Shown here piece after piece: positions 3,001 to 60,063 of a stretch of 64,000 bases of DNA (the first letter of the stretch is position 1; each line of letters begins with the position of its first letter). The position numbers and the translations under genes were made by a program. The notes below the pieces were generated by a model, which worked only from the letters and a program-made list of their open reading frames with translations, had not been told where the DNA came from and did not search any database. The DNA comes from Perna viridis (Eukaryota), in NCBI GenBank assembly GCA_037379345.1, contig CM074511.1, forward strand, positions 50,226,862 through 50,290,861. The letters are read 5' to 3'.

Positions 3001-6000
3001 TCGTATGCATGTAATTTCTGGTGACCTTAACCCACGCATGTCCTGTAAGGGTCGATTTTTAAAAAATAAAAAATCTGATTGCAAAGCGAAAGTCGTTAAT
3101 CAACGGCAAGGAAGACCGACGGACCGTAAAAGAAAAAAGTTCGAATATAACGCAAGAATCCTTTACGTATTATATTTTTTTATCATTTATTTGAGAACTA
3201 ATCAAGAAACAGATTAAATAAAATTTAAACGAGACACGTGCTTACCTGTGTATCCGTTATTGTTATTTTTTTCACCAACGTATTTTTAACCTAGGTGATT
3301 GTGTCATGTCGGCTATCTTCTGAAGTAATGGCGAAAAATAATTAGATCAGAGCTATGGATATTTTTTGATTAAAAAAACGTTCTTTTCACAATATTCTGT
3401 AGATATTATCGACATTTATTGCTTCAATTGCATTACTACAAACTTATTTCATAGATTCAGCAAAATCCAGTTTAATCAGAACTGAACAAATTTGGCAGCT
3501 AATGCAGCTTTAAACAATAAACCTCCAAATCAAGTCGACAACACAACCACGATTTGTATTATTTAACACCGTTTTCGTTTTTTCTTCTTTTTTTTTCAAG
3601 CTGAGCTTTAAAAAAAAATAAAGTATTTTTTTTATCAAGGGTGAATTTCGATTAATTATTTAAAGGTTTTTTTCTATTAAAACACAAACATTATTAACAT
3701 CAAGATGTGCATAAAAAATATTAAAATAATGAAAAATTTCGGCAAAATGGGATTCGGATTTGGCAGATGAGAATCGGCAAACCAGGTCTAATTCTCATTT
3801 TTGACGCCTGCTTACCGTCCCTCTTCCTTCACAACCACTACATACATGAAATCCATGGCCCTGACATCTATGACATTCCTGAAATGAAAAATGTACATAA
3901 AAAGCACGAAAGAACCCTTATTTACATTCTGAAATATTTTACAACTGAAGGAACTATATGATTGAAATTAATTTGTTTTCTTATTGGAGACATGACACAA
4001 AAAATACATTTTTTAAACGTTTATATTTATAAAAACTATCGTATGTTTAAATACGGGTATAACAAACGTGTTCTCATGAGGTTAGCGCTAAATAAAGTCA
4101 GAATGATTTATTTGTGTTATCACGACGACCTAGTTAATATGCATAAATGAAAACCAGAAGTTACATCCACTTACTATATATGGGAGTGCTACGTCATTGG
4201 TTCTCAATCTCCATTTGGGTGCTTTGAAAATGTATACACGTGCCCGAAAAAATTAATAAATCTTCCAAAATATTTTGTATATATAATGCAGAGTGGGCAC
4301 ATGATCTGTGTATGAGTCTGATAATCGTGTTTAGAAAGTAAGAAGATTAAAGTTCTTATCGTTTTCTGTCAGCTTTTCATTTTCTTTAGGCATATATCCC
4401 CGCGTGGCGAAAACACAACTACTTTACACACTATTTTTAGTGAACAGGAGGGTGCAAATAAAATAGTGTATTATTCTTTCTTTGCCGCGGGGTTGTATCA
4501 ATTAACAGGCCCGGTAGTCTTAATTATGGCGAAGGAAAGCGTGGGCGGCTTCTTTAATCTTTACATGGTTCGGCGCCTCGTGTCACAGATGTCGATGCAG
4601 GTGTATGACTTCGAAAATTGAAATATAATTGCATTTCATTTGACTTACGAATTTTAAAATAAAACTATTTACATGGAGAATTTTACACAATACACAATTC
4701 AAATAGGCGACCCTAGGTGAGTTTAAGGAAGCTTTTCCGGTACAAACAATGCATTTTTTTTACAGGTCAGTTAAAATACTTAATTTTAGCAAAAATGATT
4801 TAGAACACAAGGATGCTTCAGCAAGAAACTTTTATGGGTTATCAAATGAAATTATCAAAAACCAATAAAAAATGAACATGTTCGTATTATCCTATAGCTG
4901 TACTTTCGGGGTACTGATACACTTGTCAGGAGTAACGTTCCGTAAAAAAAGGGTGAAATCAACATTTTCATTGAAGATCGAGATCGGAACAGTTTAAATC
5001 TTACAATGTCAACTAATTTAATTTATGTAAAAAGTCCAATTAGAACATAATAAAATATTTCTATGTAATCTTCGAAAAGAAGTGGTGTCGTCTTTCTGTG
5101 GATCCTAGTCTTCACACATGTATAAGTTAAATATTTCTGTCATTGTTTATCATTTTCTTCTCGAAGTTGTTTAAATTGATACAACTGTAAGTATTTATTC
5201 GCAGACAAACCAAAAGTTTAAAAATTTTAAGATGACCCACGCATTTCAACCTCTCCATCTATGAATTGAGAACCAAATGACAGTCACGTGACCACATGGC
5301 TAATTAAAATTTATATGGCTCGGGTCATCATTGATTTCAAATCAATTTATCTTCAATTAAACGCCGTAAATGACTACAAGGGGCGTTTTTATGATATATA
5401 TTAGGTGTAATAAATCAAATAAACCAAAAATTAAAAAAAAATATTGGTGTCATGTCTCCTTAAAACAATGTTGAATTACCCACTCGAATAAACGCTGTAT
5501 TTGGAATTTCAATCGAACGAACTTCGTAGTCCCTAAAATTTTCACTTGCATACAGTGGAATGTCCCATGGGAATGGTGTTGGACCGTTCTGATGACTATC
5601 TACTGTTTGTCCTAGTAAATAAAATCATTGATACAACATACACCACTGTAAAAAAGGCTTCATCAACTAAAGTTCTTTTCATATATCTGTATACTAATTC
5701 TTGATTCTTACTTGTACATCAGCACTTGAAACAGTAATCAAAGAAACCAAGATTCGAGCAAGAATCAAAAGAATATATTCTAAGGATAAAGACTAGAAAG
5801 GGAAAATAGACACACAAAACAAAGAAAATGAAATAACCAAATTAATACGTACCAAAAAAAAAAAAAAAACAAACAAACAAACAAAAAACATATGTAAATG
5901 AGCAAACCAAACTCCATTAAAAACTGAGAGTATGAACCAAGTACACTGGTTTCAAGTTTGAGACGATGTTTTTTTTTTGTTTTTTATTAATTAATTAACT

Positions 6001-39667: not shown

Positions 39668-42394
39668 TTTTTAGCTCACCTGGCCAAAGGCCATGTGAGC
39701 TATTGCTATCACTTGGCGTCCGTCGTCGTCGTTAACAATTTTTCAAAACTCTTCTCCTCAGACACCACCTGACCAATTGGAACCAAACTTGGTATGAATG
39801 TTTCTTGGGGTATTGTGCATAGAAATTATGAGGGGATTTTTGATCCGTCGAAAAACATGGCCGCCGTTACTAAAAATAAAACACAGGGGTCAGACAGTAG
39901 TTTTTCGCATCTATCTCCAAAACCGTTAGGTTTAGCCAAATTCTGACATGGGATAAAAGTGTTCAGCATGATGAGATTTACCTGTGGTCAAATTTTAATT
40001 TTGATATGTTAAGCCTTGTCGGATTTATTGCCCTTTTTCGACGTTTTTTTTTTGTTGCTATTTTGAATGTCATTTCTTTCAAAAATCTTCTCCTCTGACA
40101 TCACCTGACCAATTGGAACCAAACTTGGTGTGAATGTTTCTTGGGGTATCGTGCATAGAACTGATGTGGGGATTTTTATCCGCCCAAAAACATTGCCGTT
40201 ATTATTAAAAATAGAACAAAGGGGTCAGACAGTAGTTTTTCGCATCTATCTCCAAAACCGTTAGGTTTAGCCAAATTCTGAGTGTAGTAAAATTGTTCAG
40301 CATGATGAGATCTATCTGTGGTCAAATTTTAATTTTGATATATTAAGCCATGTCGGAGTTATTGCCCTTTTTCGACATTTTTTTTTTGCTATTTTGAATA
40401 ATATTTCTTTCAAAAATCTTCTCCTCTGACACCACCTGACCAATTGGAACCAAACTTGGTATGGATGTTCCTTGGGGTATCGTGCATGAAACTGTCGTGG
40501 GGATTTTTGATCCGTCGAAAAACATGGCTGCTGTTACTAAAAATAGAACAAAGAAGTCAGATAATAGTTTTCCAAAAAAGTATCTCCAAAACCGTAAGGT
40601 TTAGTAAAAGTATTTCTATTGCTGAAATGACCCTTATGATAAGGTCTCACTAACCACTTCTAACGTTTCCATTACTTTACATGTTAAAAAAGTAATTTTC
40701 AAAGTCTCACTGTGAATTCCCAGGACAAATGACATCTTAAAGCTGCATACCGTTGCGAAGCTTGGAAAATAAGGCTTCCAAAATCATTATGCTAATGGTA
40801 CGATCATAGTATAAATTCTTCACAAAATTTACTTGAATAAATAATACTGAAAATCCACATTTTTACCTGTTCTGCTAACTGACAGCATGGAGGCAAATTA
40901 CTCACACATGTAAACAATATTCATACACTTTTGTAGTTAATTACATATATGATTTTAAAGTTCACATTCTCAGCTTTATTTTGACTACTTTTAATCATAA
41001 TACACACAAATAATGCACTTACAATGCATATGTCTAGGTTCAGTGTGTTTTTGGTACTACATAGGGGGGGTGGCCATTTGACCCGGAAGTGGTTAGTGAG
41101 ACCTTAAAAACATTTTATGAGTTTTTATGTTTTTCTGTTTTTACATTTTATGAAAGCTTGTGATATTGTGAGTCTAATAAGACCAAAACTATCAAAATAA
41201 GACATAGGACTACAAAGAAATGGTCATTTTTATATCATGCCCCTCAGTGATATTTTCCCTAAATTACTAAAAAATTACAATTTTAACTAACTTGTCACAC
41301 CAAATTGATATCTATGATAATTCAAGAAGTTGTAATAGTAAATATCATTTATCATTATGAAAAAAGAACAGATTTCAACAATTTATATCATACCTATTTC
41401 ATTACTGTGTGATTCTTAGTCTGTGCTGTGTGACTATTCGAGTACTTTGAATATCCCAAGCAGTGACGTTGTGTATTTCATGGATGACGTCAAGTTATGA
41501 GTCACTGTTACTGATAAAAATCTTGTTGCTATGGTGTTTTTTAAATTACCTTGCACAATGCACATCTTAAAATATAGCCAGATTACCAATATCACTATAC
41601 TGATTTTATGGGAAAATGGAAATAATGACCAGGAAAGGCAATTTTCCTCAAATTATGCATTTCTCTGAAATATGCCATAATTTAATTTATGGTCTCACTA
41701 ACCACTTCTAACGTTTCCATTACTTTACATGTTAAAAAAGTAATTTTCAAAGTCTCACTGTGAATTCCCAGGACAAATGACATCTTAAAGCTGCATACCG
41801 TTGCGAAGCTTGGAAAATAAGGCTTCCAAAATCATTATGCTAATGGTACGATCATAGTATAAATTCTTCACAAAATTTACTTGAATAAATAATACTGAAA
41901 ATCCACATTTTTACCTGTTCTGCTAACTGACAGCATGGAGGCAAATTACTCACACATGTAAACAATATTCATACACTTTTGTAGTTAATTACATATATGA
42001 TTTTAAAGTTCACATTCTCAGCTTTATTTTGACTACTTTTAATCATAATACACACAAATAATGCACTTACAATGCATATGTCTAGGTTCAGTGTGTTTTT
42101 GGTACTACATAGGGGGGGGTGGCCATTTGACCCGGAAGTGGTTAGTGAGACCTAAGGCCTGTAAGAGTTATTGCCCTTGAAATATGAAAAATGACAGTTT
42201 TTCTGTACAGTTTCCAGCCAATATCTTTGAAACTAAAAGAAAGAAACTTTCTATCGCTGAAATGATCCTATTGATAGTACTACCAAAGTCTTGCGTAAAA
42301 ATTGTTGGACAACTCCTTGTCAAATTTATTGCCCTTGAAAAAAAGACAAACTTTAATTAGGTGAGCAATTCAGGTTCCTGGGAATCTCTTGTTT
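39668..42394 (+). mobile_element. Helentron-associated interspersed element (HINE) with internal satellite-like array
   Basis: 5' TTTTTAGCTCACCTGG..GTGAGC stem, then a (GTC)n microsatellite, then about three 335-bp units (dimers of about 167 bp), then 3' GGTGAGC subTIR and CAGGTTCCTGGGAATCTCTTG palindrome. Inserted in a T-run with no TSD. Confidence 0.85.
40643..42152 (+). mobile_element. Composite-like non-autonomous DNA transposon (KolobokP-type): LTDR-INT-LTDR
   Basis: Direct repeats 40643-41103 and 41691-42152 differ only in a G7/G8 run by eye. Each has a perfect 18-bp TIR GGTCTCACTAACCACTTC / GAAGTGGTTAGTGAGACC. The internal region is 587 bp. TAA is duplicated at 40640-40642 and 42153-42155. 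Confidence 0.88.
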
Positions 42395-43049: not shown

Positions 43050-44250
43050 CTCTGGTGATTGCTGTCAAACAGGTTGTCAGAAAATCCAAAAGGAAATATT
43101 TCGCCCTATGCATATTATAATAGACATGAACACATTTTATTAGGGCTTCTACAATTTTCCTCAACTTTGCAGGCATTCAAAAGATTAAGTCTATTTTTAT
43201 TCAGAATAAAATTAAACATGTTATATGTATTGTTTTTGTTTTATTTTGATAAACAGTACTAAGTATCAAATTATACTTACAATTATGGTGAAGGAGGCAG
43301 TTAAGATTTTTTTAATCGTGAACAATTTACTTGACTTAGTGTGAAACTACACAAAAGATACATTGGCTTCAGTTTAATGTAGTTTAAACACATTTTATTG
43401 TCAATAAACCAAGCACAAGTAATTAGACTTCTTCTAACTACATCCCATAAATCATATTATTAGGGCCCCGCCACCAAAAGTGGCGGTTGTCCTATAATGA
43501 TCCCTCTGTCCGTTATTCCGTCCGTCCGTTACAAACTCGTGTGGGTTGGCATGTGGGTAGATCTCCTAAAATGATGTTTTGGGTTTCATAAATAAAGGCC
43601 TATGACCTTTAACTTTGACCTCAAGGTCAAATTACTGTTTTTCAGTGACAAACTCGTGTCCGGACTGTAACTTTTTGTCTTTCGATGTGGGCTTTTGATA
43701 ATTGGCACGTGGATAGATCACGTAAAATTTATTTGTCGCGTACCATGGATAGTGGCCTTTGACCTTAAACTTTGATCTCAAGATTAAATTCCATGTGTTT
43801 CAGTGACAAGTTCTTGACCAAGATGTAACTTTTTCCCTTGTCTTTGATGTGGGTTTTTGATGTTAGGCACGTGGGTAGATCACCTAAAGACAATGTGGTG
43901 CGTATCTTGGATAGTGACATATGACCTTGAACTTTGACTTCAAGGTCAAATTCTTGCTTTCCGTTGACACTCTTGTCCAGGCGGTAATATTTTTGTCTTT
44001 CGATGTGGGCTTTTAAAATTTGGCATGTGGGTAGATGATTTCCAGTTACACATACGTACAATTAACAATTCACATAATTATTTATCTTAAATGTTGTTCC
44101 TCAATAGAAAAAAAAATAGATTGTTGATAAAGTTGAGGAAAATTGTAGAAATCTTAATTGAATGTGTTCACTTATATGATGAAATGCATAGGACGAAGTG
44201 TTGTCTTTTGCATTTTCTTACAAACTACCTGTTTACCAAAATCAGTGGAA
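43050..44250. repeat. Diverged inverted repeat of about 150-170 bp (old long-TIR element) enclosing a HINE fragment
   Basis: About 43050-43210 is the reverse complement of about 44100-44250 (for example TTCTACAATTTTCCTCAACTTT / AAAGTTGAGGAAAATTGTAGAA). Confidence 0.65.
43458..44040 (+). mobile_element. HINE-like element of a second family, 3'-truncated
   Basis: 5' hairpin CCGCCAC-CAAAA-GTGGCGG, a (GTCC)n microsatellite, then about three tandem units of about 160 bp with TGACCTT...AAGGTCAA. Confidence 0.7.
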
Positions 44251-59191: not shown

Positions 59192-60063
59192 AAACAAGAG
59201 GCTCTCAGGAGCCTGAATCGCTCACCTGGTTCAAATTTTCCCTTTCAAGGGCAATAACTCAAACAAGATGTCCCAAGAATTTTGACTCACGAAGACTTTG
59301 GTAGGACTTATCATAAGGATCTTTCCATCAATTGAAAGTTCCTTCTATCTATCACAGTTCTCAAGAACTGATTGAAAACTAAAAAAACGGCTTTTTTACC
59401 TTCCAAGGACAATAACTCTAACAAGGAGTCGTCCCACAACTTCAATCCCATGCAGGCTTTTGTAGGCCTTATAAAAATGATCATTTCGGTAATTGAAATA
59501 ATTTGGCTAAAACTAACGGTTTTGGAGATGTACGAGGGAAAAAATCTGACTGACCCCTTTGTTCTATATTTAGTTACTGCGGACATGTATTTCGACGAAT
59601 CATACATCAGATCTATGCAGAAAACCCTAAAGAACATTCAAACCAAGTTTGGTTCCAATTGGTCACTTAATGTCAGAGGAGAAGATTTTTGAAACAAAAA
59701 ACATTAAAATGAGCTAAAAAAAATGTCCAAAAAGGGCAATAAAACAGATTAAATCGAAAATTTAACTACAGACAGATCTCATCATGCTGAACACTCTTAT
59801 CTCATGTCAAAATTTGGCTAAACTTAACAATCTTGGAAATATATGCGAAAAACTTCTGTCTGACCCCCATCTCCTACTTACAGAAACGGCAGAAATGTTT
59901 TTTGACGGATCAAAAATCCCCACATCAATACCAAAATTTGGTTCAAATTAGTCAAGTAATGTCGGAGAAGAATTTTAAAAAATTGTTAACAACGACTGAC
60001 GATGACGACAAACGCCATGAGATGGCGATACCTCATATGGCTTTGGACCAGGTGAGCTAAAAA
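59192..60063 (-). mobile_element. HINE, same family as 39668-42394, inverted
   Basis: AAACAAGAGGCTCTCAGGAGCCTGAATCGCTCACCTG at one end; GACGATGACGAC microsatellite and CCAGGTGAGCTAAAAA at the other. Shares the internal units. Confidence 0.85.

What the first reader, a model, noticed from the sequence alone, without database searches (positions are those of the whole stretch)
40643..42152. Very young composite DNA transposon: two TIR-bearing long direct repeats around a non-coding core, moved as one unit
Seen: two 461/462-bp direct repeats that appear identical except for a G7/G8 run. Each has its own perfect 18-bp TIR, and they enclose 587 bp with no ORF. Only the outermost ends share a TAA duplication; the inner junctions read TTA and TAT. 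Removing the element restores ...ATGATAAGGCCT..., matching the uninterrupted HINE copy near 59470. Established: this LTR-like, composite-transposon-like layout with units of about 450 bp is the described architecture of KolobokP elements, which are abundant in bivalves and whose autonomous copies encode a DDE transposase and a His-Me finger nuclease. Inference: this is a miniature non-autonomous member, recently inserted and probably mobilised in trans. How the two repeats stay identical without reverse transcription is an open mechanistic question.
Basis: partly seen in the sequence, partly recalled or inferred. Interest (0 to 1): 0.78.

Follow-up and report, generated by a model that had tools for sequence, protein, structure and literature searches.

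The report
Non-coding KolobokP composite transposon copy
This is one very young, non-coding copy of a KolobokP-type DNA transposon, a kind described in bivalves in 2022, so it is ordinary in kind; the one new point is that about a tenth of its family's roughly 1,300 insertions sit at one exact spot in another repeat.

Summary
Window 40643-42152 is LTDR(461)-INT(587)-LTDR(462). [quoted passage not shown] Each has perfect 18-bp inverted ends (GG...CC). Only the outermost ends share a 3-bp TAA duplication.

It is not a one-off. The genome holds 3,194 exact copies of the 18-bp end (about 1,600 LTDRs). About 275 copies of the same core (INT) sit between LTDRs. Solo LTDRs, monomers, (LTDR-INT)n-LTDR arrays and LTDR-(INT)2-5-LTDR forms with a 4-bp loss at INT-INT joints all occur. 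Sampled copies have 3-bp duplications in 13 of 14 cases. This matches the published KolobokP architecture feature by feature (Kojima & Bao 2022). That paper already lists an equally small non-coding family (1,463 bp). The genome also carries many coding KolobokP copies.

No coding partner with this end sequence was found in about 50 nuclease-adjacent loci.

Two additions:
- Both subfamily-diagnostic substitutions occur in the left and right LTDR of all 9 monomers, so the repeats are homogenised.
- About 9% of insertions, in both orientations, hit one TAA in a 331-bp host repeat.

Verdict: a new member of a known kind, of modest interest.

The parts
40640..40642 (.). Left copy of the 3-bp target-site duplication (TAA)
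   Evidence: Sequence read. The same TAA follows the element at 42153-42155. 13 of 14 sampled family insertions have perfect 3-bp duplications.
40643..41103 (+). Left long terminal direct repeat (LTDR), 461 bp, G7 run, non-coding
   Evidence: Identical to the right LTDR apart from one G. 99-100% identical to at least 40 scored genomic copies out of 1,565 first-look candidates.
40643..40660 (+). 5' TIR of the left LTDR (GGTCTCACTAACCACTTC)
   Evidence: There are 3,194 exact occurrences genome-wide.
41086..41103 (-). 3' TIR of the left LTDR
41104..41690 (+). Internal region (INT), 587 bp, non-coding; starts TTAAAAAC and ends AATTTAT
   Evidence: No ORF longer than 53 aa and no Rfam match. 538 first-look genomic candidates, with the 40 scored at 99-100%. 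Exact LTDR-INT junctions number 275 and INT-LTDR junctions 273.
41691..42152 (+). Right LTDR, 462 bp, G8 run
41691..41708 (+). 5' TIR of the right LTDR
42135..42152 (-). 3' TIR of the right LTDR
42153..42155 (.). Right copy of the TAA target-site duplication
39733..40642 (+). The repeat continues after the element from 42153.
   Evidence: Tandem Repeats Finder. Alignment of the flanks to uninterrupted monomers.

Best explanation
The element is a non-autonomous KolobokP-type composite DNA transposon monomer, laid out LTDR-INT-LTDR. It belongs to a large and very young family in this genome. A Kolobok-type DDD/E transposase supplied in trans most likely moved it as one unit. That enzyme would have used the outermost pair of the four identical 18-bp TIRs and made a 3-bp staggered cut at a TAA inside a 331-bp host repeat (inferred). 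Any pair of TIRs can apparently be used, which explains the solo LTDRs and the INT-INT joints. Unequal crossover or reintegration of LTDR-INT circles between LTDRs makes multimers and solo LTDRs, and also homogenises the two LTDRs. That homogenisation, together with the youth of the copy, is why the two repeats are identical (partly shown, partly inferred).
For: - Anatomy and TSD.
- Family census: 3,194 exact TIRs; 275 LTDR-INT and 273 INT-LTDR exact junctions; monomers of 1,486-1,510 bp, solo LTDRs and a multimer of more than 15 units with a 1,047-bp period on C8.
- TSDs: 13 of 14 are perfect 3-bp duplications at unrelated loci.
- A C3 array is LTDR-(INT)2-5-LTDR with 4 bp missing at each INT-INT joint (and the junction spacings). 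This is the footprint the KolobokP paper describes.
- The paper's definition (LTDR ~450 bp, TIR 11-18 bp, RR...YY ends, TSD 3-5 bp, solo LTDRs, multimers) is met point by point. Its Table S1 already lists a 1,463-bp non-coding family.
- The genome is rich in coding KolobokP: 574 His-Me nuclease candidates, many of them in arrays of 3.97-4.43 kb period. One unit carries a 680-aa Mutator-like/Kolobok-type transposase (PF20700, E=3e-59) convergent with a PF05551 nuclease (E=3e-14).
- Concerted evolution: the two sites that define the subfamilies (LTDR positions 170 and 320) carry the same state in the left and right LTDR of all 9 monomers. There are no left- or right-specific sites.
Against: No coding element carrying this TIR or LTDR was found. 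The TIR, allowing up to 3 mismatches, is absent from about 50 nuclease-adjacent loci. A sequence model of LTDR positions 1-200 finds nothing in 35 of them. The sampled autonomous families have two other TIR types. Pairing the junction lists on contigs C1-C3 shows no 3-4 kb INT. Membership therefore rests on architecture, not on a transposase link. In the paper's Table S1 a 3-bp TSD goes mostly with the ~650-bp LTDR class and is less usual with ~450-bp LTDRs. Recent insertion at this locus is inferred from identity only. Reads could not show either junction of this copy or an empty allele.
Confidence: 0.87

Rival explanations
1. A PIF/Harbinger-type MITE family (3-bp TWA duplications) happens to occur as direct pairs, and is not related to Kolobok.
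For: The TSD is 3 bp. About 39% of outer ends are flanked by TAA or TTA, against about 7% expected from base composition (searches give the denominators).
Against: About 60% of TSDs are not TWA; examples are ATA, AAT, ATT, AGA, TCA, CAA and TGA. The LTDR-INT-LTDR layout, multimers, INT-INT microdeletions, the 461-bp repeat length and the RR...YY ends are the KolobokP signature. Kolobok itself targets TTAA, so a TWA bias is expected. The genome is full of KolobokP.
Confidence: 0.06
2. The structure is a fragment of a 1,047-bp satellite dispersed by segmental duplication or eccDNA reintegration, not a unit that transposes.
For: Long arrays with an exact 1,047-bp period exist on C8, C2, C9 and C10.
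Against: Monomers at unrelated loci end exactly at the outer TIRs and carry perfect 3-bp duplications of different sequence. The arrays end in an LTDR. Insertions at the hot spot occur in both orientations, in host-repeat copies that have diverged from one another.
Confidence: 0.03
3. Two independent solo-LTDR insertions happen to bracket unique DNA, or a local duplication or assembly artefact produced the pair.
For: None beyond its possibility a priori. The G-run difference could in principle be a homopolymer sequencing error.
Against: The same 587-bp INT sits between LTDRs about 275 times. Only the outer ends share the TSD. An independent sample's 640-bp contig spans LTDR-INT-LTDR (record 21).
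Confidence: 0.01

Closest known systems
KolobokP non-autonomous families (Kojima & Bao 2022, Mob DNA 13:24, PMC9587614), e.g. KolobokP-N1_CorFlu (1,463 bp, LTDR 473 bp)
   Same: LTDR-INT-LTDR layout with LTDRs of about 450 bp that carry their own 18-bp TIRs. GG...CC (RR...YY) termini. A short TSD. Solo LTDRs, (LTDR-INT)n-LTDR multimers and LTDR-(INT)n-LTDR forms with a 3-4-bp loss at INT-INT joints. A non-coding INT of about 0.5 kb. Copy numbers in the hundreds to thousands.
   Different: The TIR and LTDR sequence was not found in the paper's supplementary files. The TSD is 3 bp, whereas most ~450-bp-LTDR families in Table S1 have 4 bp. There is a strong single-site insertion hot spot, whereas the paper reports no strong target preference. 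No autonomous partner has been identified.
Autonomous KolobokP elements of this same genome (e.g. L061 = C8:44324000-44329999; families with TIR AGGATACAA... or AGGYACGARACCACAATTA)
   Same: The same architecture and LTDR length class (about 455-470 bp). They form large tandem multimers. They are the presumed source of the transposase.
   Different: They encode a 680-aa transposase and a His-Me nuclease. Their TIRs and LTDRs show no detectable similarity to this element's.
Bacterial composite (compound) transposons such as Tn10 and Tn5, and IS26 pseudo-compound transposons
   Same: Two copies of a TIR-bounded unit bracket cargo, and the whole moves by use of the outermost ends. The flanking unit can also move alone.
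   Different: Here the flanking units are non-coding and always in direct orientation. Any transposase is supplied in trans or, in autonomous relatives, encoded by the internal region.
TRIM / LTR retrotransposons
   Same: Long direct terminal repeats, solo repeats and tandem LTR-INT arrays. The two repeats are identical in young copies.
   Different: Each repeat has 18-bp TIRs and ends GG...CC rather than TG...CA. The TSD is 3 bp. Nothing suggests reverse transcription. Repeat identity is maintained by DNA-level homogenisation.

Membership tests
KolobokP (Kolobok superfamily) | Composite-like LTDR-INT-LTDR architecture | tested here: met
   461-bp + 587-bp + 462-bp layout. It recurs genome-wide.
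KolobokP (Kolobok superfamily) | LTDR length in one of two classes, about 450 bp or about 660 bp | tested here: met
   461/462 bp here and 459-461 bp in 25 aligned copies. The classes are defined.
KolobokP (Kolobok superfamily) | Each LTDR has its own short TIRs (about 11-18 bp, up to 25) with 5'-RR...YY-3' termini | tested here: met
   A perfect 18-bp TIR, GG...CC.
KolobokP (Kolobok superfamily) | TSD of 3-5 bp flanking monomers, solo LTDRs and multimers | tested here: met
   13 of 14 insertions have perfect 3-bp TSDs. About 39% of outer ends are TWA.
KolobokP (Kolobok superfamily) | Solo LTDRs, (LTDR-INT)n-LTDR multimers and LTDR-(INT)n-LTDR forms with a 3-4-bp microdeletion at INT-INT joints | tested here: met
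   Solo LTDRs and a C8 multimer. A C3 array with (INT)2-5 and a 4-bp loss at each joint (and spacings).
KolobokP (Kolobok superfamily) | [quoted passage not shown] | tested here: inconclusive
   The element has no ORF. Coding KolobokP elements abound in the genome. None of about 50 sampled nuclease-adjacent loci carries this TIR or LTDR. Only 150 of 574 nuclease candidates were scored, so absence is not shown.
PIF/Harbinger MITE (Tourist-like) | Strict 3-bp TWA target-site duplication | tested here: not met
   6 of 14 sampled TSDs are not TWA. Genome-wide, about 39% of outer ends are TWA.
PIF/Harbinger MITE (Tourist-like) | TIRs shared with an element that encodes a DDE_Tnp_4 transposase and a Myb-like protein | not tested
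   No search for Harbinger transposases was run.
LTR retrotransposon / TRIM | Direct repeats ending TG...CA without long TIRs; a primer-binding site and polypurine tract in the internal region | tested here: not met
   The repeats end GG...CC and have 18-bp TIRs. The INT starts TTAAAAAC. PBS and PPT were not searched for formally.
Bacterial-type composite transposon | Flanking units are insertion sequences that encode their own transposase | tested here: not met
   The LTDR has no ORF longer than 37 aa.

The most novel reading that the evidence does not exclude
This KolobokP family integrates with real sequence specificity. About 120 of roughly 1,300 insertions, in both orientations, lie at the same TAA in the motif ...AATCTGT|TAA|GCCATGTTGGAG... 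of a 331-bp host repeat. That repeat makes up on the order of 0.2% of the genome. The implication is that its still unidentified transposase, or an accessory protein acting in trans such as the I-PpoI-like nuclease whose relatives cut at a central TTAA, recognises an extended target. That would be a property not reported for KolobokP. Together with the LTDR homogenisation seen here, the family would become a workable system for studying how composite eukaryotic DNA transposons pick targets and keep their repeats identical.
Probability: 0.5. Interest if true: 0.55.

Novelty: new member of a known kind. Interest (0 to 1): 0.33.

Why it matters
The element adds one more non-coding family to a transposon lineage that is already described, so the architecture itself is not news.

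Three points make it a useful test case:
- **Size and youth.** The family has about 1,600 LTDRs, and many copies are 99-100% identical, so it may still be active.
- **Homogenisation.** There is direct evidence that the left and right repeats are homogenised. This bears on the published unequal-crossover and circle models.
- **Hot spot.** There is a precise insertion hot spot used in both orientations, which contradicts the general statement that KolobokP lacks target preference.

For genome annotation it also matters that this family, and the multi-kilobase KolobokP arrays around it, are recognised as transposons rather than satellites.

Tried and rejected
- **Scripts.** The script machine was lost. 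No genome-wide BLAST census, tree or divergence dating could be run. Counts therefore come from exact-pattern searches and are approximate.
- **Large fetch.** Smaller fetches were used instead.
- **Reads.** Only Logan short contigs were available. The region is too repetitive for them to show this copy's flank junctions, an empty allele or circles. This gives no verdict on polymorphism or on the assembly of this locus.
- **Partner search.** All of the following were negative:
  - the TIR with up to 3 mismatches;
  - 8-mer and 12-mer ends;
  - an internal 22-mer;
  - a sequence-only model of LTDR 1-200 over the nuclease-adjacent loci;
  - pairing of the junction lists on C1-C3 for 3-4 kb spacings.
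- **Wasted search.** One search used a badly chosen degenerate pattern and did not filter anything. It did show that every listed TIR is attached to LTDR-type subterminal sequence, and that older copies with CpG decay exist.
- **Paper's supplements.** The TIR string was not found. The consensus-sequence PDF could not be searched by family name, so identity with a listed family such as KolobokP-2_PeVi (LTDR 456/455, TSD 3, TIR 18) cannot be excluded.
- **Homing or gene conversion as the cause of the hot spot.** Rejected, because both orientations occur (72 forward against about 49 reverse) and the flanks are diverged.
- **Rfam** gave no match.
- **Species.** Fifteen large contigs, and a 4,069-bp array period equal to KolobokP-1_PeVi's full length minus its LTDR, suggest a Perna-like mussel. 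This is unverified and nothing in the report depends on it.

Full report
**Observation.**
- Two direct repeats lie at 40643-41103 (461 bp) and 41691-42152 (462 bp). They differ only in a G7 versus G8 run.
- The 18-mer GGTCTCACTAACCACTTC occurs exactly four times in the 64-kb window, at the four repeat ends in inverted pairs. Shuffled sequence gives 0.04 matches on average.
- The 587 bp between the repeats have no ORF above 53 aa and no Rfam match.
- TAA flanks the whole unit on both sides. The inner junctions read TTA and TAT.
- The element sits near the end of the third monomer of a 331-bp tandem repeat at 39733-40604. Aligning the two flanks to uninterrupted monomers, including the copy at about 59470 on the minus strand, places the insertion at a single TAA.

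**It is a family, not a one-off.** The window is G000:C1:50226862-50290861.
- A whole-genome search with the repeat gave 1,565 first-look candidates. All 40 that were scored are 99-100% identical.
- The core gave 538 candidates, with 40 scored at 99-100%.
- Exact-pattern counts are 3,194 TIR 18-mers, 275 LTDR-INT junctions and 273 INT-LTDR junctions. That leaves about 2,650 outer ends, or roughly 1,300 insertions. This is an approximation: mutated ends are missed, and a sister family is included.
- In 30 fetched loci I found solo repeats, monomers of 1,486-1,510 bp and a multimer of more than 15 units with a 1,047-bp period on C8.
- Of 14 independent insertions, 13 have perfect 3-bp duplications (TAA, TTA, ATA, AAT, ATT, AGA, TCA, CAA, TGA).
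It is therefore not met.

**What it is.** Kojima & Bao (Mob DNA 2022, PMC9587614) define KolobokP by the following features:
- long terminal direct repeats (LTDRs) of about 450 or about 660 bp;
- LTDRs that carry their own 11-18-bp TIRs with RR...YY termini;
- short TSDs;
- solo LTDRs and (LTDR-INT)n-LTDR multimers;
- LTDR-(INT)n-LTDR forms that lack 3-4 bp at INT-INT joints.

All of these are present here. An array on C3 aligns as LTDR-INT-INT-LTDR with exactly 4 bp missing at the INT-INT joint. The junction spacings in that array correspond to (INT)2, (INT)3, (INT)4 and (INT)5. Table S1 of the paper already lists a comparably small non-coding family, KolobokP-N1_CorFlu, at 1,463 bp. So 'miniature' is not new.

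The genome is rich in coding KolobokP. Pfam PF05551 (the His-Me nuclease loop) has 574 candidates, and the 150 scored all pass the cut-off. Many lie in arrays with periods of 3.97, 4.02, 4.07 and 4.43 kb. One unit (L061) has a 680-aa ORF matching PF20700 (Mutator-like transposase) at E=3e-59. It lies convergent with a PF05551 ORF at E=3e-14. Earlier notes from this scan on other windows of the same genome reached the same classification for sister elements.

**The missing link.** I could not tie this LTDR to a coding element.
- The TIR, with up to 3 mismatches, is absent from about 50 nuclease-adjacent loci at 20 or more genomic sites.
- A sequence-only model of LTDR positions 1-200 finds nothing in 35 of those loci.
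- Those loci do contain their own LTDRs, with two other TIR types: AGGATACAA...GCGCAATTATTTG and AGGYACGARACCACAATTA. So the sampling design did capture LTDRs.
- Pairing the two junction lists on C1-C3 shows no INT of 3-4 kb.
- A sister family (L063, C1:0.495-0.514 Mb) has a 466-bp LTDR that is about 90% identical, around an unrelated 1,252-bp non-coding INT. So this LTDR lineage carries at least two unrelated cargoes.
- Mobilisation in trans is therefore inferred, and its enzyme is unknown. Only 150 of 574 nuclease candidates were scored, so a partner may still exist.

**How the repeats stay identical.** I aligned 25 LTDRs: both sides of 9 monomers, 5 solo LTDRs and 2 array units.
- Two subfamilies are defined by two linked sites: position 170 (T or G) and position 320 (T or A).
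- In all 9 monomers the left and right LTDR carry the same haplotype. No site is specific to the left or the right side.
- A composite that is merely copied as DNA should accumulate side-specific differences. Instead, both diagnostic changes are present on both sides, which requires homogenisation.
- The INTs of the two subfamilies differ more (about 1.4%) than the LTDRs do (about 0.5%).
- This fits the published models, in which unequal crossover between LTDRs, or recombination of LTDR-INT circles with LTDRs, makes multimers and solo LTDRs and re-forms monomers.
- I cannot tell these models apart. For the window copy, simple youth is also sufficient.

**An unexpected target bias.**
- Four of the first 14 insertions lay at the same place in the same host repeat.
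- Genome-wide, 129 TIR ends are followed by TAAGSC.
- Of 12 newly sampled ends, all 10 TAAGCC ones lie at the identical position of the 331-bp repeat. Their flanks differ from one another by roughly 5-15%, while the LTDRs are about 99% identical. They are therefore independent insertions. The 2 TAAGGC ends are elsewhere.
- The empty consensus 25-mer occurs 1,063 times. About a third of occupied sites match it exactly, which suggests a few thousand target copies, or roughly 0.2% of the genome.
- Those copies receive about 9% of all insertions.
- The right end of the element adjoins TAAGCC in 72 of about 121 cases. Both orientations are therefore used, which argues for transposase-type integration rather than homing or gene conversion.
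- More broadly, about 39% of outer ends are flanked by TAA or TTA, against about 7% expected. That is in line with Kolobok's ancestral TTAA target.
- The paper states that KolobokP shows no strong target preference. This family appears to be an exception. Retention bias has not been excluded formally, because insertion density at other TAA sites within the repeat was not tabulated.

**Limits.**
- The script machine failed, so there is no full census, dating or phylogeny.
- The available public runs are short Logan contigs. They confirm the family and the LTDR-INT-LTDR junctions in independent samples (record 21). They cannot test this locus, its zygosity or circular forms.
- The family's TIR was not found in the paper's supplementary text, but the consensus PDF was not reliably searchable.

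**Verdict.** The element is a new member of a known kind. Interest is modest. It is raised slightly by the site-specific hot spot and by the evidence for LTDR homogenisation.

Noticed in passing
Genome-wide; examples are window 40640-40642, L003, L027, L004 and L087-L095: About 120 of roughly 1,300 insertions of this family lie at one TAA in the motif AATCTGT|TAA|GCCATGTTGGAG of a 331-bp host repeat. Both orientations occur (72 against about 49), and the host copies are diverged from one another. The published view is that KolobokP has no strong target preference.
   Followed up: partly
L063 = G000:C1:503100-505400 (array at C1:0.495-0.514 Mb, period 1,718 bp): A sister family has a 466-bp LTDR about 90% identical to this one, with the same left TIR and 2 mismatches in the right TIR. 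It carries an unrelated, internally repetitive 1,252-bp non-coding INT. So this LTDR lineage carries at least two unrelated cargoes, which hints at de novo capture as in bacterial composite transposons.
   Followed up: partly
L062 = G000:C3:43318250-43320450; array at C3:43.313-43.333 Mb: An array of LTDR-(INT)n units with n = 2 to 5. Each INT-INT joint lacks 4 bp. LTDR-(INT)2 is the commonest unit, as if it had itself been amplified.
   Followed up: partly
L064 (C1:1218320-1218420) and L065 (C1:1621327-1621427): Two places where an LTDR right end and the next LTDR's left end are separated by exactly 14 bp. The spacer sequences differ. One spacer repeats the last 11 bp of the TIR. This remains unexplained; possibilities are nested or aberrant insertion next to an existing end.
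   Followed up: no
G000:C8:44.29-44.43 Mb, C2:60.46-60.57 Mb, C15:25.73-25.80 Mb, C13:2.13 and 23.15 Mb, C7:34.24 Mb, C3:32.6 Mb, C1:0.53 and 13.7 Mb: Very large tandem multimers of coding KolobokP units, with periods of 3,971, 4,023, 4,065-4,069 and 4,417-4,428 bp, plus 919/1,838-bp nuclease-only units on C2. There are dozens of units per array, and the nuclease reading frames are open.
   Followed up: no
First 100 TIR sites on C1: Many LTDR copies show CpG-to-TpG/CpA changes just inside the TIRs (TAACG to TAACA or TAATG; CCGGG to CTGGG or CCAGG). The family therefore spans a range of ages and has been subject to CpG decay.
   Followed up: no
L066 = G000:C1:3520780-3521810: An LTDR copy interrupted or replaced over about 530 bp by GC-rich unrelated sequence. 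Both TIRs are intact and the element is 990 bp long.
   Followed up: no
window 43597-44036: A separate 162-bp tandem repeat (2.8 copies, 75% matches) about 1.4 kb downstream of the element.
   Followed up: no
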